Assembly (NCBI GenBank): GCA_965112735.1
Contig: OZ218956.1
Span: 186,001-250,000, forward strand
Direction of reading: 5' to 3'
Source of the DNA: Phaeosaccion multiseriatum
Taxonomy: Eukaryota > Protista > Ochrophyta, other classes
DNA: 64,000 nt
Below the pieces are notes generated by a model. It saw only the letters and a list, made by a program, of their open reading frames with translations. It did no database searches and had not been told where the DNA came from. Position 1 is the stretch's first letter. Every line of letters begins with the position of its first letter. The translations under genes and the position numbers were made by a program. Positions 35,732 to 46,937 of the stretch are shown one piece after another.

Positions 35732-36843
35732 GGCCGAAGGCGTGGCCGTGCGCGTGCGTGGGAGCAGCGGGTCCACGTAGAAGCAGAGTCCTTCGATGCT
35801 CACCACGTGCGGAGTGGCCCCGAGGCTGTCCTTATCCCTCATGGCCAGGTCAGACCGGCACGACACCGCCGCCAACACGAGGCCGAAGCTGTGGCCGAAG
35901 ACGCGGTCCTCCACTCGCCAGTGCAGGTCTGTGACTGTGAAGACAAGGTGGTTGATGAGGCTATCCACAATGAAGCCCCACCTCTTGAGGCGCCGTCCGT
36001 AGGTGCCTTCGATGAGGTGCGTCACGTAGTCTGCGTCCCAACGCCGGAACATGGATGCCTTCTTGTAGTAGCGGCTTCAGTCAGAGAGAGAGAGAGAGAG
36101 AGAGAGGCGCAAGAGATAGGAGGCAAGGGGGCAGGGAGGGCGACACGAATGGACGGGATGGGCGATGCAAGTAAACGTGAGACATGAGTCGGATTCCCCT
36201 CAAGAGCTGAGTACCAAGGAAAGGAGTGGCAGTTGGCAGCAGGGCCCGTCCTATCCCGTTCCCATCCCATCTATAGCGCCCACACTCACTCCTCGTTCCA
36301 CTCGTCCTCGTGCGTGCGTCTCCCGCTGAGCATGACTCCATCGAGCGTGGCGATGAAAGAGCCCTGCCTCCATAGCCGGAAGGGGCTCAGCACCGCGCAC
36401 ACGCTGCGCACCGTGCAGCGCTCCACTTTGAGCGGGATACCCCTGTGCATGTACTCGTTCACCAGGGACTCCTGGACCCAGTCGGACACCACCACATCTC
36501 GCAGAAGCAGCTCCGGCCATGAGAAAGACAAGTAGCTCCTCCACGCTGGGCCTGCTGCATCCGTCCCAGGCCACAGCAGCTCCAGCGTGAGCCCCTCGTC
36601 CATACATAACAGCCTCGACTTACGCACCACCCACAGCAAGGCGGCACAGAGCCGTTGCTGAGCCGCAGCCGGACGGAGTTTAAAGAACAGAGCCAGTCCA
36701 AGCAAGATCAAAAGGGGAAAGAGGAGGAGGAGCAGGCCTGCCAGCCGCCACAGAGAGCGCGGCCCAGAGATCAGGGGCAGCACACACGCCGCAGCAGCCA
36801 CAGCCACGCTGGCTGCTGCTTCTCTCCTCGGCAAGCCCGTCAT
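9651..36843 (-). CDS. VPS13: VPS13-family (bridge-like lipid transfer) protein, many exons; exon structure only partly resolved
   Basis: 5' exons 36290-36843, 35414-36074, 34883-35034, 34509-34602, 33809-34171 are phase-consistent and chorein-like ([28 protein letters not shown]). Also [17 protein letters not shown]-like repeats ([64 protein letters not shown]), [16 protein letters not shown], and C-terminal [21 protein letters not shown] and [50 protein letters not shown] (ATG2_C-like). Last exon is inferred to end at 9651. Confidence 0.88.
16111..16322. repeat. 15-bp minisatellite (ctatcctgacaccag) x ~14
   Basis: Direct reading; VPS13 intron. Confidence 0.95.
16888..17236. repeat. (GACA)n intronic microsatellite
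   Basis: Direct reading; VPS13 intron. Confidence 0.95.
23390..23555. repeat. ~15-bp GGCATA(T/G)GGGCAGA tandem repeat
   Basis: Direct reading; VPS13 intron. Confidence 0.9.
24195..24551. repeat. (CA)n-type intronic microsatellite
   Basis: Direct reading. Similar tracts at ~1320, ~11990, ~26150, ~33595 and ~48175. Confidence 0.95.
27500..27768. repeat. 30/42-bp minisatellite (agtagaggggacatgttagttagtacgaca) x ~8
   Basis: Two 42-bp units followed by ~six 30-bp units, in a VPS13 intron. Confidence 0.9.
30880..31290. repeat. ~32-bp minisatellite built on CCATCCACTGCCATCCCCTCCCCTGCCCCTCA
   Basis: Direct reading; VPS13 intron. Confidence 0.9.
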
Positions 36844-36984
36844 TGCATGGACTTTGGGACGCCTAATTACAAAAATAAGAAGAGGGCTGGATACGACACA
36901 GCTTTCCACTGCCATCGCAGCCTTTAACAACCAAAGCACGATACCTTCCTCTTCTCTCTCCTTGGTTCTTGGTTCCTCAATACC
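36844..36984. promoter_or_regulatory. Putative bidirectional promoter/5' UTR region between divergent ATGs (VPS13 and dead GT90 copy)
   Basis: Only ~140 bp separate the minus-strand ATG (36843) and plus-strand ATG (36985). The paralogous spacer is 46551-46678. Confidence 0.55.
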
Positions 36985-37142
36985 ATGTCGACAGCTCTTT
37001 CCTCCTGCCCCGCCGCTGTGCTTGCGAGGCCTCTATGACAAAGAGGCCTCAGATCCCGAGCTGCTTGGAAAGGAGCTGGACAACTCCATGTTCTCAGACC
37101 CGACCTTCGACATAAGGACGACTGCGTGGAGTTCGTCAAGAG
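36985..37142 (+). pseudogene. Dead copy of GT90 exon 1
   Basis: Compared with 46679-46860 it has a +1 T at codon 5 (gctctttcct vs gctcttcct) and a ~24-bp deletion removing LPQKGFLR. No downstream exons follow. Confidence 0.9.
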
Positions 37143-39206
37143 GTGAGTGCCATTGGGCCTCGGTGCGTGTTGCCTAAGTACTGCTGCTGCTGCTGCGGCG
37201 GCGGCTGGTGGTGGTACTGCTTTCTCTTCCTTGTTGATTTCTTGCACTTGCTTGCACGCCCCACAGGCAGCGAGCGGAAGCTTGTTTCTCACACCGGCCG
37301 GCGACGGATCTTTGTTGTGCCCATGCAGGGTGACCCGGCGGGACAAGCTTCTGGCTGGGCTTACTTCCAGCGGGCATGGAGTCAGAGCCTTGAGGGGCTC
37401 GCGGTATGAACACGCAGTGGGCTGGCTGGCTCCCCTTCGCTTCAACACTCGAGCAGGGGCCGCGAGGGACTCCAGACATGTTCGGCTTTCAGCTTCCTTC
37501 CCAGCCCGGCGGCGGTGACAGGCGAGCGACTAGGAGGGGACTGAGGATTTGCCTCCCTTGCCATTCATGGGCGAAGTTTTAAAGGCAGTAAGAAGCAGGT
37601 TTTGTTGTGCCTTAGCTACTTTGCTCCACCTCGGTGTGTCATCCTGCCCAAGAGGGGGAGATGTAGACTGCCGTCCGGCAGCTAGCCCTAAGCCACCAAG
37701 GAACAGCCAAGCTGTGCACAAGGCCACACGCGTCACTGCATCTAGAGGTGTGAAGCGTTACGGAGTGTCATGATGATGCTGAGCCAAGACGGGGAGGCAG
37801 GGACCGCCCCTGAGCGTTCGGCAGCCTGTGGGGCGCTCGAAGATGGGAAGTAGCGAGGAGGGAGGAGGGAGACTCCGGCTCGAGCGACGACATGAGCTCG
37901 ACTGGCTGCACCTCGCCCAGCCAATTCACGCATTCCCACGAAGGCAGGGAAGGGCCTCTCCATTCTGCCGCTCCTCCCAGGAGACAACAGAAGGCAGCCA
38001 GGATGGGGAGGAGGAGCGAGCTGGGGACAGGAGGGACAGGATGGGGAGGAGATGCCCAGTCAAACCGAGCAAGGGACAGGAGGCATATGGGCAAGCCGCT
38101 GCCCGGATTGAGGCGGCTGTACAAGTAGAAGGGACACCAAGCCTCTAGGCCGGCCGGGGCTGCTTCCGACTGGCTGGAGCGGAGCGCCCTGTGGAGCCCT
38201 CACTGGCCACGAGGAAGCTGGGCGGAGGGGGCGGATGGTCACGCGCTCGACACCGCTACAGCCGAGAACGATGGGAGATTGCAGTAGCCCCCCCCCAGGC
38301 AGGCCACAGCTCTTAACTGAAATTTCATTTGGATAAGACATGCTGCATTATGTGGTTTGCTCACCACTCCCACGTTGCTGTCTGTCTACTCTGCCCTATC
38401 CGCACCTACTCCCTAAAACTATTCATTTTTAATTATCAATTAATTACTTCCTTACCGTACCATGAATACGAGATACGCTTGGGCAGCTGCACCTCATCCC
38501 CCGCCCTCTTGTTGGTGGCACGACAGCGGCTGGCTGGGCTGCTCCTCCCCTTGCCCTTCCTCTGCCCACGTGCAGCGGCGGCAGGGCGCGAGGCGGTGTG
38601 CCTGCCTCTGAAGACAGCGAGTGAAGGCAACACTTGCACTGCCCCCCTACGGGCAAGGGGTGGCAGAAAGAGTAGAGCAGGGCATAGCTAGGAGAGAGGT
38701 GCAGGGCACGGCAGGGCAGAGCAGGGCAGAACAGACAGCGGTACATACGAGGCCGAGCACGCACCGCGCCTGCTCGACTCGCTCATTCCCTGGACTCACC
38801 AACTTACTCACCTGCTCGCTCGGCCTGCGAAGTTGCCTGCCGCGTTGATGACGAGGGAGGGGGGAGGTGTGAAGAGTCCAGTCCCGCCGTCGACTGCCAT
38901 CCCCCTGCCCCTCTCTGCCGCCCTCCTCCTCCTCCTCCTCCTCCTCCTCCTCCTCCTCCTCCTCCTCCTCCTCCTCCTCCTCCTCCTCGCTCCTCGCTCC
39001 TCCCCCTCTCCTTAACTCCGCCACCACGCAAGATCGTTGCTCCATGGTGGGGAGAGTGGTAGGGGGCGCCGAGCGTGGGTGTGCTGTAGGCTATAACCAA
39101 AGGGCCTGCTGGCACCGAGGTCTCTTCTACTTCTGCTCACCTAATACTCCAGAAGGGCAGAGCAGAGCACAAGATCGTTGCTCCATGCTGGTGGGGAACT
39201 GTAGTG

Positions 39207-40386
39207 TCGGCTCCAGACTGGCCTAGAAGCCTATGCCCTAGGCCGGCCATTTTCTCTCCCTCTAGGCCGGCGGTTCTAGGCCTAGGCCTCGACCCTGGAT
39301 AAGAATATCTGATTACTGATTACGGCCGGCGCAGCCGGCCTGATCACTGATTATGACCAGCGCCAGCCGGCCTGATTACTGATGATGCGCCAGCCGGGGG
39401 CTGATTACTCATTACGGCCGGGGGGCACACCGGAATCTTGTCCAGGGTCGAAGGGAGGGAGGGAGGGAGGGAGGGAGGGAGGGAGGGAGGGAGGGAGGGA
39501 GGGAAGGAGGGAGAGAGGGAGGGAGGGAGGGAGGGAGGGAGGGAGGGAGGGAGGGAGGGAGAAAGGGAGGGAGGGAGGGAGGGAGGGAGGGAGAAGGGAG
39601 GGAGGGAGGGAGGGAGGGAGGGAGGGAGGGAGGGAGGGAGGAAAGGAGGGAGGGAGCGAGGGAGCGAGGGAGGGAGGGAGGGAGGGACGGAGGGACGGAG
39701 GGAGGGAGGGAGGGAGGGAGGGAGGGAGGGAGGGAGGGCGGGAAGGAGGGAGGGAGGAGGGAGGGAGGGAGGGCAGGAGAGAAGGAGGGAGGGAGGGAGA
39801 AAGGGAGGGAGGGAGGGGAGGGAGGGAGGGAGGGAGGGACGGAGGGAGGGAGGGAGGGAGGGAGGGAGGGAGGGAGGGAGGGAGGGAGGGAGGGAGGGAG
39901 GGAGGGAGGGAGGGAGGGAGGGAGGGAGGGAGGGAGGGAGGGAGGGAGGGAGGGAGGGAGGGAGGGAGGGAGGGAGGGAGGGAGGGAGGGAGGGAGGGAG
40001 GGAGGGAGGGAGGGAGGGAGGGAGGGAGGGAGGCAGGGAGGCAGGGAGGGAGGGAGGGAGGGAGGGAGGGAGGGAGGGAGGGAGGGAGGGAGGGAGGGAG
40101 GGAGGGAGGGAGGGAGGGAGGGAGGGAGGGAGGGAGGGAGGGAGGGAGGGAGGGAGGGAGGGAGGGAGGGAGGGAGGGAGGGAGGGAGGAAGGGAGGGAG
40201 GGAGGTGCGCCAGCCGGGGGCTGATTACTGATTACGGCCGGCGCACACCGTAATCTTGTCCAGGGTCGAAAGGCCTAGGCCGGGGGGGCTGCGCCAAAAA
40301 TAGGCCTAGGCCGTGGGCCTCCGGCCCCCTCTAGGCCGGCCGAATTTCGTCTCTAGGCCTAGGCTTCTAGGCCAGTCTGGGGCCGA
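39207..40386. mobile_element. Non-autonomous TIR DNA transposon (MITE-like), 27-bp TIRs, 6-bp TSD GTAGTG
   Basis: Left TIR tcggctccagactggcctagaagccta (39207-39233) is the reverse complement of 40360-40386 with 1 mismatch. GTAGTG lies at 39201-39206 and 40387-40392. Subterminal CTAGGCC and CTGATTACTGATTACGGCCGG repeats; no transposase ORF. Confidence 0.85.
39453..40204. repeat. (GGGA)n tract of ~750 bp inside the TIR element
   Basis: Direct reading; flanked by ~65-bp direct repeats at ~39386-39452 and ~40207-40270. Confidence 0.95.
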
Positions 40387-41192
40387 GTAGTGTGCAACCA
40401 CCGCTCAGCGCCTCCACCAAGAGGGCCTGGCGCCGAGTATTCTAGTAGATCAGGGCAGAGTAGAGCAGAGCAGGGCAGAGCAGAGCAGAGCAGGGCAGAG
40501 CAGGGCAGGGCAGAGGGCGGAGCAGAGCAAATAGCTACTATACCAAGCTAAACCTTTGCTTCCTCTTTGCTTCCTCCCCCTTCTCCGCTTACCTTCAGGC
40601 GACTCCTGCACTGCCGGTGAGACTTCTCCGGATCCCGCCACAATGGCGCGGCCCCGCCTCAGGACAGAGCACCGCAGGGCAGAGCAAAGCAAGACCGCTT
40701 CGTCCCACTACTCCGCTCACCTTCAGGAGGCTCCGGCACTGCCGGCGAGATTGCTCTCTATCCCACCACAATGGCTCAAGAGCGAGAAGTGCGCAACTCA
40801 GCCTTCCCCCCCCCCCCTCTTTCTCCTTTATGATGCGCCTTCATTCCTTCAGCAGCAGCGCCAACATCGTCAATTCCTGCGCCTCTGCTGTCGTCCCTCG
40901 CCGCCTTCTCCACCTGCTTTTGTCGCTGCCCTCCGTGCATCCCCGGAAGGAGCATGGCAAGGAGGGGGTGGTGCCACTGATACCCGAGTAGTAGCAGCAT
41001 TACCTTATCAAGGAGAAATGATATTATAGAAAAGGGGAAGGAGAAGCGCCTCTCTCCACATTGGGAAAGTGGTTGTCCAGCTTTCCGGCTTGGCAGCAGC
41101 TGTTCCCGCGAGAAGGGAGATCACGCGAGATTGTATCTGCTTCCCCAAAGTCACTTCAGTAGCAGCCTCAGCAAGAAGAAAAGCGGTGGGTG

Positions 41193-44100
41193 ATGGCCGA
41201 CGTACTCGAGCAGCAGCAGCGCAGGACACTCTCCGCCTTCTTCCGCGCCACAGGCGGCCCGACATCCTGGGAAAGGAAGAGCGGATGGAATACCCCAGCA
41301 CCTTTGAAGGACTGGCATGGGGTGACCGTGGAGAATGGCTATGTGGTTGGGCTTGACCTGGGTGATTATTGCAACGGTAATGGGCTCGTAGGTAAGAAGA
41401 TGGTGTGTGAGGAGGGAGGGGGCTGCAAGTCGTCGCTTTCTCCCAAATTGCTTATCACGCTTCTCTGAACTGTTGGCGCGAAGCTGATACCCGGCAATGG
41501 AGGGGTCGAGGCATATGCGAGACGCCTTGCGCCACCGAGAAGAGAAGGGGGGGGAAAGTGCCTTTTACGCCAGGCCCTGGTGTCGTCTGCTGCCCCAGTG
41601 TCGAGTGGCACGCACGAACTAAAAGAACTTTCCTCTCCTCTCTTCGCAGGAAACATTCCGCCGGAGCTTGGCCAGCTCTCCAATCTGAAGGAACTGGGTC
41701 TCAGCAACAACCAGCTCTCTGGTAAGTGGCAGCAACCCTCGGGGCCCACTTGGCTCGATATTGGCGTGACCAAACATCTTTCCTCTCCTCTCTTCGCAGG
41801 AAATATTCCGCCGGAGCTTGGCCAGCTCTCCAATCTGAAGGAACTGGGTCTCAGCAACAACCAGCTCTCTGGTAAGTGGCAGCAACCCTCGGGGCCCACT
41901 TGGCTCGATATTGGCGTGACCAAACATCTTTCCTCTCCTCTTCGCAGGAAACATTCCGCCGGAGCTTGGCCAGCTCTCCAATCTGAAGGAACTGGCTCTC
42001 TACAACAACCAGCTCTCTGGTAAGTGGCAGCAACCCTCGGGGCCCACTTGGCTGGATATTAGCGTGACCAAACATCTTTCCTCTCCTCTCTTCGCAGGAA
42101 ACATTCCGCCGGAGCTTGGCCAGCTCCCCAATCTGACGACACTGTGGCTCAGCTACAACCAGCTCTCTGGTAAGTGGCAGCAACCCTCGGGGCCCACTTG
42201 GCTCGATATTGGCGTGACCAAACATCTTTCCTCTCCTCTCTTCGCAGGAAATATTCCGCCGGAGCTTGGCCAGCTCTCCAATCTGGAGGTACTGGATCTC
42301 GACAACAACCAGCTCTCTGGTAAGTGGCAGCAACCCTCGGGGCCCACTTGGCTGGATATTGCCGTGACCAAGGAAAGATCTTACCTCTCCTCAGCAGGCT
42401 GCATTTGCATGGAGCGGGCAGATGTTTGACTGGGCCCATAGTTGAAAGACGTGTTCCCGGCAACTCAAATCCCTCCTCCCCCCCTCGCTTCTTCTGGGCA
42501 TTGCACGTCTTGGGGCTGGTGCTGGCCTGGCTGTGTGGTTTGGGTGGGGGGGGGGGCTACTTGATCGATTTTGACGTCTTGTCCTGCATGCTTGCCCTAC
42601 CGCTCCCCCCAATTACTCCACTCTCTCTGCCCTTATTATAAAAATACCCATCTGGCTGTCTTCGGGGATCTGACGTAATCTGACTTGAGGAATGTCCTGC
42701 CTCCTCTCCCATGCCGAACGTGCACACCTGCAGAGAAGGAGCCTTCGATAACGGAGCTACGGGCGAGGTGGCAAGCGCGCGTCGCCACGGAGGTAAGGGC
42801 GAGGGTGCATGCAAACAGTCACGGAGTGAGGTGTCGAAGCGCAATGCGCACTGTCGGCGTTCATGGGAGGCGATGGAGGGGGGTATGCCGACAACGACAG
42901 CCAGGCTTACCATTCGAGTGGCAGAAGTTTCTTTAGCACTGACGCGTCCTTCGCGCCTCCTGCCCCTCCTCTTCCTCCTTCACCGCACCGCCCCTGCACC
43001 TCCTCTGAAAGAGTGCCTCACAGGCGGCTGCGAGAGTCTCAAGAGGCTCAGCAGCATGCTCATCTCCAGGAAGAAGACATGAGACGGAGCTCAGAGCTTT
43101 ACGAGCGGCACTGGAAGGGAGAGATGGTGAGCTGGGGGGGCTGAGAGCGGCGCTGGAAGGGAGAGACGGTGAGCTGGGGGGGCTGAGAGCGGCGCTGGAG
43201 GGGAGAGATGGTGAGCTGAGAGCTTTAAGAGGAACGCTTCAAGAACGCAATGACGAAGTGGAAGCGAGAGATGCTGAGCTGGAAGCTTCGAGGTCAAGGC
43301 TGCAAGAGAGAGACGGTGAGGTGGAAGAGAGAGATGGTGAGCTGAGTGCTTTAAGAGCAACGCTTCAAGAAAGAGACGACGAAGTGGAAGCGAGAGATGC
43401 TGAGCTGGAAGCTTCGAGGTCAAGGCTGCAAGAAAGAGACGACGAAGTGGAAGCTCTGAGAGCAAGAGTCGCTGAGCTTGAGGAGCAGGAGGAGCTTCGC
43501 CTTGCTGGAGAGCGCCCACCACCCCCTCCCCAGCAAGAGGGGCGGGACTTTCGCCTCTTCTACACTTCACAGCTGGCGGAGGCGTGTGCTGACTTTGCGG
43601 ATACGGACCTGCTGCTGGGCAGGGGGGGCTTCGGGGCGGTGTATCGAGGACGTGGCGCGGCCTTGGGGCTGGGGAGCGCGCAGGAGGTGGCCGTGAAGAA
43701 GCTCGACGCGGACAGTATGCAGACACTGGCCAACTTCCGGAAAGAGGTGAGGGTGTTGACGCTGTGTCTGCATGCGAACCTCCTGCCGCTGCTGGGCGTC
43801 TGCCTAGACCCGTGCTGCCTGGTGTATCCCCTCATGAGGGGAGGCAGCTTGGACGCGTATCTGCCCGTCCGCGCAACGCTGCAGGGAGGCTCGGAGCGAG
43901 GGCCGCTGTCCGCCCCGAGACGGTTGGGTGTAGCGCTCGGCGTTGCCAGAGCCCTGATGTACCTGCACAGCGAGATGGGCGAGAAGCCCCGAATCATCCA
44001 CCGGGATGTCAAGCCCCACAACATCCTCTTGGAGGAGGCGAGTGAGGGGGACGCCTCCCTGGGAGTGCGTCTGGGGGACGTGGGAATTGCTCGGGTCTCC

Positions 44101-44706
44101 GATACGACGGCAACTGCAGGAACGATGACTGGCATCGCAGGGACTTTCTTGTACATGGACCGGGATTACTTGGGCGGCGCTGAGCCCAGGTGTGAGCATG
44201 ATGTGTACTCTCTGGGCGTGGTGATGCTGGAGCTCGTCATGGGTAGGCTTGTGCGCGGAGAAGATCTGCGCCATGGTGCCAGGCAGCGGCTGTTGTCGGA
44301 CGACGGAGCGACAGCGGTGGCCGATTCAGCCATCTCTTGGACTGGAGGGGCCACGGGTCTGCTTCAGTTGCTCGCAAGCATGGCGTACCGCTGTACCCAG
44401 GACGATCCCGAGGCCAGGCCCGCACTGGATGAGATTGCACGGACCCTGGCCGCCGCATTGGGGGGAGGGGGGGGACGGTCGGCCGCGCGAGTAGAGCCCG
44501 AGCGCGAGCGGCTGTGCATCATATGCATGGACGCAGCCCCCCACACCCGATTCTTGCCATGCCTCCATTCCTGCACCTGCGGAGCCTGTGGAATGAGGTT
44601 GCAGAACGAGCGGCGGCCTTGTCCTCTTTGCAACACGAATATCGAGGCTGTGGAGGAGGGGCGCTTCGATTCAACTTTCGTGCAAGATGGGGGCACGAGG
44701 GGATAG
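41193..44706 (+). CDS. LRR - coiled coil - IRAK/Pelle-like kinase - C3HC4 RING protein, predicted 766 aa
   Basis: Exons 41193-41391 (LRR N-cap TLSAFFRATGGPTSW..W..WHGVTVENGYVVGLDL), five 72-nt phase-1 LRR exons (41650-41721, 41800-41871, 41948-42019, 42098-42169, 42248-42319), 42734-42792 and 43024-44706 join in frame with GT-AG sites (2301 nt). Kinase motifs LGRGGFGAVY, VAVKKL, HRDVKPHNILL, DVGIAR, DVYSLGVVMLEL; RING CIICMD..FLPCLHSCTCGAC..CPLC. The LRR-to-kinase junction is inferred. Confidence 0.75.
41625..42370 (+). repeat. Five tandem 150-bp exon+intron LRR cassettes
   Basis: Unit = 72-nt exon + 78-nt intron (one is 76 nt). Introns are nearly identical (gtaagtggcagcaaccctcggggcccacttggct...ctcttcgcag). 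Confidence 0.97.
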
Positions 44707-45308: not shown

Positions 45309-45755
45309 CCCTCAATTGATCCTCACTTCTCAGAGTCAAAACCCTCAATTGATCCTCAGTTCTCAGAGTCAAAACCCTCAATTGATCCTCAGTTCTCAGA
45401 GTCAAAACCCTCAATTGATCCTCAGTCCTCAGAGTCAAAACCCTCAATTGATCCTCAGTTCTCAGAGTCAAAACCCTCAATTGATCCTCAGTTCTCACAG
45501 TCAAAACCCTCAATTGATCCTCAGTTCTCAGAGTCAAAACCCTCAATTGATCCTCAGTTCTCAGAGTCAAAACCCTCAATTGATCCTCAGTCCTCAGAGT
45601 CAAAACCCTCAAGTGATCCTCAGTCCTCATAGGCAAAACCCTCAATTGATCCTCAGTTCTCAGAGTCAAAACCCTCAATTGATCCTCAGTTCTCAGAGTC
45701 AAAACCCTCAATTGATCCTCAGTTCTCAGAGTCAAAGCCCTCAATTGATCCTCAG
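45309..45755. repeat. 33-bp minisatellite, ~13-14 copies
   Basis: Unit ccctcaattgatcctcagttctcagagtcaaaa, near-identical head-to-tail copies with no spacers. Confidence 0.95.
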
Positions 45756-45892: not shown

Positions 45893-46937
45893 AGACGTGA
45901 GTTCCCGAGAGTTGACTACCAAGGGAAAAACGAGAGGCAGTAGGCAGCAGCCCCCGTCCTATCCCGCTCCCACCCCATCGAGAGCACACACACTCACTCC
46001 TCGTTCCACTCGTCCTCGTGCGTGCGTCTCCCGCTGAGCATGACTCCATCGAGCGTGGCGATGAAAGAGCCCTGCCTCCACAGCCGGAAGGGGCTCAGCA
46101 CCGCGCACACGCTGCGCACCGTGCAGCGCTCCACCTTGAGCGGGATGCCCCTGTGCATGTACTTATTCACCAGGGACTCCTGGACCCAGTCGGACACCAC
46201 CACATCTCGCAGAAGCAGCTCCGGCCATGAGAAAGACAAGTAGCTCCTCCACGCTGCGCGTGCTGCATCCGTCCCAGGCCAAAGCAGCTCCAGCGTGAGC
46301 CCCTCGTCCATACATAACAGCCTCGACTTACGCACCACCCACAGCAAGGCGGCACAGAGCCGTTGCTGAGCCGCAGCCGGACGGAGTTTAAAGAACAGAG
46401 CCAGCCCAAGCAAGATCAAAGCGGGGAGGAGGAGGAGGAGCAGGCCTGCCAGTCGCCACAGAGAGTGCAGCCCGAGATCAGGGGCAGCACACACACTGCA
46501 GCAGCCACAGCCACGCTGGCTGCTGCTTCTCTCCTCGGCAAGCCCGTCATTGCATGGACTTTGGGACGCCTAATTACAAAAACAATGAATGTGGATACAT
46601 GGCTTTCCAGTGCCATCGCAGCCTTTAACAACCAAAGCACGATACCTTCCTCTTCTCACAGCTTGGTTCCTCAATACCATGTCGACAGCTCTTCCTCCTG
46701 CCCCGCCACCGTGCTTGCGAGGCCTCTATGACAAAGAGGCCTCAGATCCCGAGCTACTTGGGAAGGAGCTGGACAACTCCATGTTCTCAGACCCGAGCTT
46801 GCCGCAGAAGGGTTTCCTGCGCTTCGACAACAAGGACGACTGCGTGGAGTTCGTCAAGAGGTGAGTATGCCATTGGGCCTCGGTGCGTGTAGCCTAAGTA
46901 CTGCTGCTGCTGCTGTGGCTGGTGGTGGTACTGCTTT
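45893..46937. repeat. Right copy of ~1 kb direct segmental duplication
   Basis: Matches 36180-37223. Confidence 0.95.
45998..46550 (-). pseudogene. Dead copy of VPS13 exon 1
   Basis: Same [13 protein letters not shown] start, but a 1-nt deletion near 46472 (gcagcccgaga vs gcggcccagaga) shifts the frame to a stop after ~44 codons. No exon 2 downstream. Confidence 0.88.

What the first reader, a model, noticed from the sequence alone, without database searches (positions are those of the whole stretch)
41625..42370. LRR exon+intron cassettes with near-frozen introns but hypervariable ligand-facing codons
Seen: five 150-bp units. The beta-strand segments read KELGLSN, KELGLSN, KELALYN, TTLWLSY and EVLDLDN. 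Leucine codons (ctg, ctc) are invariant, the only synonymous exon difference I see is aac/aat, and one S/P change lies outside the strand. Introns differ by just a few SNPs and one 2-nt deletion. Variable codons differ by multi-base changes (ggt/gct/tgg/gat; agc/tac/gac). So the exposed codons are more variable than the adjacent introns. Inference: near-identical introns act as recombination or conversion handles, letting symmetric phase-1 cassettes be gained, lost or swapped from a genome-wide pool (a VLR-like diversifying logic). Exon skipping could add combinatorial isoforms.
Basis: partly seen in the sequence, partly recalled or inferred. Interest (0 to 1): 0.85.

Follow-up and report, generated by a model that had tools for sequence, protein, structure and literature searches.

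The report
One-repeat-per-exon LRR kinase gene
An alga has a spliced gene whose sensor part is five near-identical exon-plus-intron units that differ almost only at the binding-face residues; brown algae already have this design, so it is a tidy new example rather than a new immune system.

Summary
There are five 72-nt phase-1 LRR exons with introns of 78, 76, 78 and 78 nt. Ten of 15 nt vary in the five exposed β-strand codons, against 2 of 57 in the exon scaffold and 3 of 78 in the introns (Fisher p about 1e-7; the sites are not independent). Spliced GT..AG joints occur in a public run. The array is the sensor end of a predicted cytosolic N-cap–LRR–coiled coil–Pelle/RLK-like kinase–RING gene in an ochrophyte alga. 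Exon size, intron position, consensus and variable sites (15, 17, 19, 20) match the published brown-algal type I LRR exon. The introns are not specially frozen: they vary about as much as silent exon sites (p=0.49). Read depth suggests about five copies of this intron, so it is probably locus-specific. Unit 5 looks like a unit-2/unit-3 chimaera joined inside the exon. Best reading: germline unequal crossing-over or conversion homogenises whole units while selection diversifies the binding face. VLR hallmarks, exon skipping and a genome-wide intron pool are not shown. This scan has already reported the design at many other loci of this genome.

The parts
41193..41391 (+). Exon 1: start codon and LRR N-terminal cap (66 aa), no signal peptide
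   Evidence: In-frame stop upstream; run X5 contig covers 41115-41389 and joins by GT..AG to an LRR exon; 3107 relatives, 139 of the top 150 carrying GxIP-type LRRs; maximum 19-aa hydropathy 0.25
41650..41721 (+). LRR exon 1 (strand KELGLSN)
   Evidence: Pfam LRR_4 E=0.0025; spliced contig in X5
41722..41799 (+). Repeat intron 1 (78 nt, identical to intron 4)
41800..41871 (+). LRR exon 2 (KELGLSN; differs from exon 1 only by AAC/AAT)
41872..41947 (+). Repeat intron 2 (76 nt; 2-nt deletion in the pyrimidine tract)
41948..42019 (+). LRR exon 3 (KELALYN)
42020..42097 (+). Repeat intron 3 (78 nt, 2 SNPs)
42098..42169 (+). LRR exon 4 (TTLWLSY; S-to-P outside the strand)
42170..42247 (+). Repeat intron 4 (78 nt)
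42248..42319 (+). LRR exon 5 (EVLDLDN); 5' side like unit 2, 3' side like unit 3
   Evidence: 131-nt identical run with unit 2, 59-nt run with unit 3
42320..42397 (+). Fifth, partly diverged intron copy ending in a possible acceptor; if used, a stop follows after 10 aa
   Evidence: no X5 coverage beyond it
42734..42792 (+). Predicted linker exon (phase 1 to phase 0)
   Evidence: Splice signals and open frame; a paralog DNA contig matches 42683-42727; not covered by the spliced run, so inferred
43012..44706 (+). Last exon: tandem-repeat coiled coil, Pelle/RLK-like kinase with catalytic motifs present (GxGxxG, VAVKK, HRDxKxxN, DVG), C3HC4 RING
   Evidence: Pfam PK_Tyr_Ser-Thr 6e-31 and zf-C3HC4_3 3e-11; motifs; best hits plant RLK/Pelle and environmental kinase-RING proteins at about 31-41%; largely covered by X5; the 5' boundary is inferred

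Best explanation
The array encodes the ligand-binding solenoid of a cytosolic LRR–coiled coil–kinase–RING protein, probably a non-self or stress sensor (function inferred). Each repeat is one symmetric 72-nt exon, so any gain, loss or swap of a 150-nt exon+intron unit keeps the frame. Ordinary unequal crossing-over and gene conversion between adjacent units, using the whole unit as homology, keep introns, silent sites and scaffold nearly identical. Diversifying selection keeps changes at the five exposed β-strand codons from being erased. Shown: anatomy, splicing of exon 1 to an LRR exon and of LRR to LRR, and the excess of change at x codons. Suggested by three informative sites: intra-array recombination. 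Inferred: selection as the cause, the LRR-to-kinase splice junctions, an evolutionary rather than within-individual timescale, and the immune role.
For: pN at x codons is 0.39, against 0.013 in introns and 0.04 at silent scaffold sites. The variable positions coincide with the positively selected sites 15, 17, 19 and 20 of Ectocarpus type I exons (PMC3341825). The four-gamete test fails between exon nt 5 and both exon nt 55 and intron nt 35. Introns are no more uniform than silent sites (p=0.49). Intron copy number is about 5. Leu codons between the variable codons are invariant here but differ in paralog fragments. The kinase exon has no in-frame Met before its N-lobe, so it needs upstream exons. 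The same mechanism is documented for Podospora het-d/het-e WD40 repeats (PMC1805685) and for homogenised repeat introns in Argiope MaSp2 (PMC9779670).
Against: Only five units and four distinct strands. The four-gamete signal could be one recurrent C>T change. No population or long-read data. Junctions from LRR exon 5 to the kinase exon are not seen in the spliced run for this gene. Multi-base codon changes (ACA, TGG) with no silent change are fast for point mutation alone.
Confidence: 0.7

Rival explanations
1. Inter-locus supply in the germline: β-strand patches or whole units are imported by ectopic conversion from other LRR arrays of this genome, then spread locally. This is the het-e-like or Ectocarpus ROCO-like reservoir model.
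For: Three block imports would explain all 10 codon variants. Many similar arrays exist in this genome (unchecked notes). One paralog DNA contig matches into the first 20 nt of the intron. Intergenic LRR recombination is published for Ectocarpus ROCO genes.
Against: No silent hitch-hikers at the interleaved Leu codons, although paralog fragments differ there. Intron depth is about 5 copies. Intermediate states (GGT/GCT/GAT; AGC/TAC/GAC) are one or two steps apart.
Confidence: 0.18
2. Programmed somatic diversification (VLR-like) or regulated exon skipping generates a receptor repertoire within one clone, with the intron as recombination handle.
For: Symmetric exons allow in-frame skipping. Splice variants with different LRR content are reported for Ectocarpus ROCO genes (PMC11378527).
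Against: Complete intron-containing gene; no silent or inverted donor LRRs in 64 kb. The apparent skips in X5 are a 102-nt (72+30) loop contig at 1.7x the depth of exon 1, which fits exons 1 and 2 both being included. No notable intron structure (-13.5 kcal/mol, no shuffle control). Somatic recombinants have not been reported even in brown algae.
Confidence: 0.05
3. Very recent tandem duplication with relaxed constraint or local hypermutability at the strand codons, with no selection for diversity.
For: Small sample; exposed residues tolerate change; units 1 and 2 are still identical at the x codons.
Against: Relaxed constraint cannot exceed the neutral rate: 0.65-1.1 variable sites are expected in 15 nt and 10 are seen. 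The interleaved Leu codons, including their third positions, are untouched, which argues against a regional mutation hotspot.
Confidence: 0.07

Closest known systems
Brown-algal type I LRR exon arrays (Ectocarpus ROCO genes and five LRR-kinases; PMC3341825, PMC11378527)
   Same: One LRR per 72-nt exon, with nt 3-71 coding 23 aa; consensus GxxPxxLxxxxxLxxLxLxxNxLx; LRRNT-like N-cap; variable sites 15, 17, 19, 20 on the concave face; kinase partners known; VLR analogy and skipping already proposed.
   Different: Here the introns are tiny and about 99% identical, which I did not find described in those papers. No silent or inverted intronic LRR exons. The partner is coiled coil + Pelle/RLK-like kinase + RING with no membrane anchor. 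Ectocarpus LRR-kinases showed no sign of shuffling, whereas this one shows recent repeat turnover. The host is an unidentified ochrophyte.
Podospora HNWD (het-d/het-e) WD40 repeats (PMC1805685)
   Same: Concerted evolution of repeat scaffolds with a few positively selected interface residues.
   Different: WD40 repeats rather than an exon+intron LRR unit; exchange between loci and repeat-number polymorphism are shown there and untested here.
Argiope MaSp2 spidroin repetitive introns (PMC9779670)
   Same: Small introns about 97.6% identical within a gene, diverging between genes, proposed to aid homogenisation.
   Different: A structural protein with no hypervariable binding face.
[quoted passage not shown]
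   Same: One LRR per symmetric exon; young genes with repeated exon/intron units; some fused to kinases; unequal crossing-over.
   Different: 90-nt exons, phase-2 introns, association with a retrotransposon.
Lamprey/hagfish VLR (PMC3308329)
   Same: LRR solenoid with a variable concave face.
   Different: VLR is an incomplete germline gene assembled somatically from hundreds of flanking cassettes, with CDA1/2 implicated and no introns between repeats.

Membership tests
Brown-algal-type 'type I LRR exon' gene | Each LRR on one 72-nt exon, with 2 nt at the start and 1 nt at the end in the junction codon | tested here: met
   published layout
Brown-algal-type 'type I LRR exon' gene | Consensus GxxPxxLxxxxxLxxLxLxxNxLx | tested here: met
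Brown-algal-type 'type I LRR exon' gene | LRRNT-like N-terminal cap before the array | tested here: met
   (no Pfam hit)
Brown-algal-type 'type I LRR exon' gene | Diversifying change at residues 15, 17, 19, 20 | tested here: met
   8/12 nt vary vs 3/42 in the free intron, p=6e-5; five units only, no formal site model
Brown-algal-type 'type I LRR exon' gene | Exons spliced together in RNA | tested here: met
   GT..AG joints and empty introns in run X5, which is labelled 'DNA?' but behaves as RNA
Actively shuffling Ectocarpus ROCO-type locus | Roc-COR GTPase downstream | tested here: not met
   kinase and RING instead
Actively shuffling Ectocarpus ROCO-type locus | Silent or inverted LRR exons inside introns | tested here: not met
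   only the five + strand LRRs in six frames of the window
Concertedly evolving repeat receptor (het-e-like) | Recombination among repeats within the gene | tested here: inconclusive
   four-gamete failure on 3 informative sites; one recurrent mutation would also explain it
Concertedly evolving repeat receptor (het-e-like) | Repeat exchange between loci and repeat-number polymorphism among strains | not testable with these tools
   no genome-wide search; contigs collapse the array; metagenome scans found no relative with an array
VLR-type somatic assembly | Incomplete germline gene flanked by many donor LRR cassettes | tested here: not met
   complete reading model, no donors in 64 kb; definition
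VLR-type somatic assembly | Cell-to-cell differences in the assembled gene; deaminase dependence | not testable with these tools
   only assembled contigs were available
Membrane LRR receptor kinase | Signal peptide and a transmembrane helix between LRR and kinase | tested here: not met
   hydropathy scan of exon 1 and the last exon finds no such segment before the kinase; the predicted 20-aa linker is polar

The most novel reading that the evidence does not exclude
In this alga the 150-nt LRR exon+intron unit turns over so fast, within and between many loci with different effector domains, that a clonal culture carries a mix of arrays or skipped isoforms on which infection can select. That would be the within-lifetime receptor diversification proposed but never shown for brown algae, in a compact form that one PCR or long read can span.
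Probability: 0.06. Interest if true: 0.85.

Novelty: new member of a known kind. Interest (0 to 1): 0.3.

Why it matters
It is a clean, compact example of a published design. The tiny homogenised introns give an internal neutral clock, showing the binding face changing roughly 10-30 times faster than baseline. The 0.75-kb array fits in one amplicon, so the open question from 2012 (do algal LRR arrays reshuffle within a lifetime?) is cheap to test here. It also shows recent repeat turnover in an LRR-kinase, a class where none was seen in Ectocarpus. It does not by itself show a new mechanism, and longer arrays elsewhere in this genome would be better test subjects.

Tried and rejected
An exact intron pattern in metagenome contigs found nothing. 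The kinase-RING query in metagenome contigs gave one weak, AT-rich, unrelated locus with no LRR array. The N-cap word search found no candidates; the profile search returned long multi-module LRR proteins that I did not trace to genomes, so I could not measure intron homogenisation in other ochrophytes. The findings search by sequence was blank, which is uninformative here. Intron retention was considered because three introns are 78 nt with open frames; it was rejected because intron 2 would shift the frame and X5 shows splicing. The skipping joints 41389>42096 and 41720>42097 were rejected as evidence, since the 29 exon bases used are identical in exons 1, 3 and 4. An assembly artefact is unlikely: the units differ from one another, flanking contigs match at 100%, and summed depth fits five units.

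Full report
Observation. The window is GC-rich, microsatellite-rich eukaryotic DNA. Tandem Repeats Finder reports a 150-nt unit in 5.0 copies at 41628-42371. Each unit is a 72-nt exon bounded by CAG and GTAAGT, with the intron after the first base of a Gly codon, followed by an intron of 78, 76, 78 or 78 nt. A fifth intron copy diverges after 52 nt. The exons encode the 24-aa GxIP-type LRR: Pfam gives weak LRR hits, and solved relatives are Leptospira LRR proteins and plant receptor kinases.

Is it more than chance? The x positions of LxxLxLxxN (residues 14, 15, 17, 19, 20) are defined independently of these data, and 15, 17, 19 and 20 are the published selected sites in Ectocarpus. Ten of their 15 nt segregate, against 2 of 57 in the rest of the exon and 3 of 78 in the introns (p=3e-7 and 9e-8). 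pN at x codons is 0.39, against 0.013 intron diversity and 0.04 at silent scaffold sites. With only the four published codons and only the unconstrained intron middle, the contrast remains (p=6e-5). These p-values treat sites as independent, which overstates them: only four distinct strands exist, and three block events could produce them. Introns are not more conserved than silent exon sites (p=0.49). The anomaly is therefore the fast codons, not frozen introns.

The gene. Exon 1 (41193-41391) encodes an N-cap. Its relatives are followed by the same kind of LRR in 139 of the top 150 hits, and it has no signal peptide. Downstream lie a predicted linker exon (42734-42792) and a long last exon (43012-44706) with a repeat-built coiled coil, a Pelle/RLK-like kinase with its catalytic motifs, and a C3HC4 RING. 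The model is about 770 aa. The last exon has no in-frame Met before the kinase N-lobe, and paralog contigs in both a DNA run and the spliced run link LRR-like sequence to the same downstream segments. The fusion is therefore likely, but the junctions of this gene were not observed. A possible acceptor at 42397 would give an LRR-only product. A neighbouring Sec7 exon is closest to Phaeothamnion and Ectocarpus among 7 hits, so the host is probably an ochrophyte alga; the species was not identified.

Reads. Run X5, a second sample of the same organism, is labelled 'DNA?' but covers exons and not introns, and it has GT..AG joints from exon 1 to an LRR exon and from LRR to LRR. The joints are drawn to unit 4, but the 29 bases used are shared by exons 1, 3 and 4. 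The LRR contig is a 72+30-nt loop at depth 37.6, against 22.4 for exon 1. That fits exons 1 and 2 collapsed together and is no evidence of skipping. In the DNA run X3, depth summed over the array is 1.1 times single copy, and the peak at the intron 3' end is 4.7 times. This fits five local copies and no large pool at 85% identity or more. The evidence is moderate, because contig depths are coarse and some records are filtered out. Paralog fragments differ at silent Leu, Asn and Gln codons that are invariant in this array, and one matches only the first 20 nt of the intron.

Mechanism. Three informative sites exist. Exon nt 5 is incompatible with exon nt 55 and intron nt 35, which agree with each other. 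Unit 5 shares a 131-nt identical run with unit 2 on its 5' side and a 59-nt run with unit 3 on its 3' side. The simplest recombination reading puts the exchange inside the exon, so homology is the whole unit and not the intron; one recurrent C>T change would also explain it. I favour unequal crossing-over or conversion among adjacent units plus diversifying selection on the concave face (0.70). Import from other loci is the main rival (0.18), then relaxed constraint (0.07) and somatic or splicing diversification (0.05). The immune role is inferred from architecture and analogy only.

Comparison with what is known. Zambounis et al. (PMC3341825) describe the same 72-nt type I exon in Ectocarpus ROCO genes, five LRR-kinases and 46 other loci. 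They report selection at 15, 17, 19 and 20, intra- and intergenic recombination, and the VLR hypothesis. Teng et al. (PMC11378527) add alternative splicing and note that somatic recombinants have not been reported. Homogenised scaffolds with a few selected residues are known from Podospora het-d/het-e, homogenised repeat introns from Argiope MaSp2, and one-LRR-per-exon arrays from Tetrahymena. VLR membership fails on the tested feature: the gene is complete and has no donor cassettes. What differs from Ectocarpus is the tiny near-identical intron, the absence of silent exons, recent turnover in a kinase gene, and the coiled coil-kinase-RING partner. I found no paper on that partner in limited searches.

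Earlier notes of this scan report the same design at many other loci of this genome, on ROCO, KAP NTPase and kinase-RBR genes. They are unchecked. My reading was recorded before I saw them, and I do not count them as support.

Verdict. A real feature, correctly observed; a new member of a known kind; interest 0.3.

Noticed in passing
window 36203-37223 and 45908-46937: A 1-kb direct duplication (90% identical) of host sequence flanks the 8.7-kb block that holds the LRR-kinase gene, as if the block had been inserted or carried by a local duplication.
   Followed up: partly
window 43103-43454: The coiled coil in the last exon is itself built from recent 42-nt and 63/126-nt tandem repeats, so linker length may also vary by unequal crossing-over.
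   Followed up: no
window 42320-42432: The fifth intron copy ends in a possible acceptor exactly 78 nt in; its use would give a short LRR-only protein ending 10 aa later.
   Followed up: partly
window 41722-42247: Three of the four repeat introns are 78 nt and open in the coding frame; only the 76-nt intron 2 would shift the frame if retained.
   Followed up: yes
window 39200-39451 and 40206-40420: Related short direct and inverted repeats rich in CCTAGG/GGCCGGCC flank a 750-nt AGGG microsatellite upstream of the gene; possibly a decayed small transposon.
   Followed up: partly
window 45309-45755: A 33-nt minisatellite in 13.5 copies (96% matches) lies between the gene's 3' end and the right-hand duplicated segment.
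   Followed up: no
window 43400-44650: Several single-copy-depth DNA contigs about 85-90% like the kinase exon show close paralogs in the same genome; one also carries N-cap-like and LRR pieces.
   Followed up: partly
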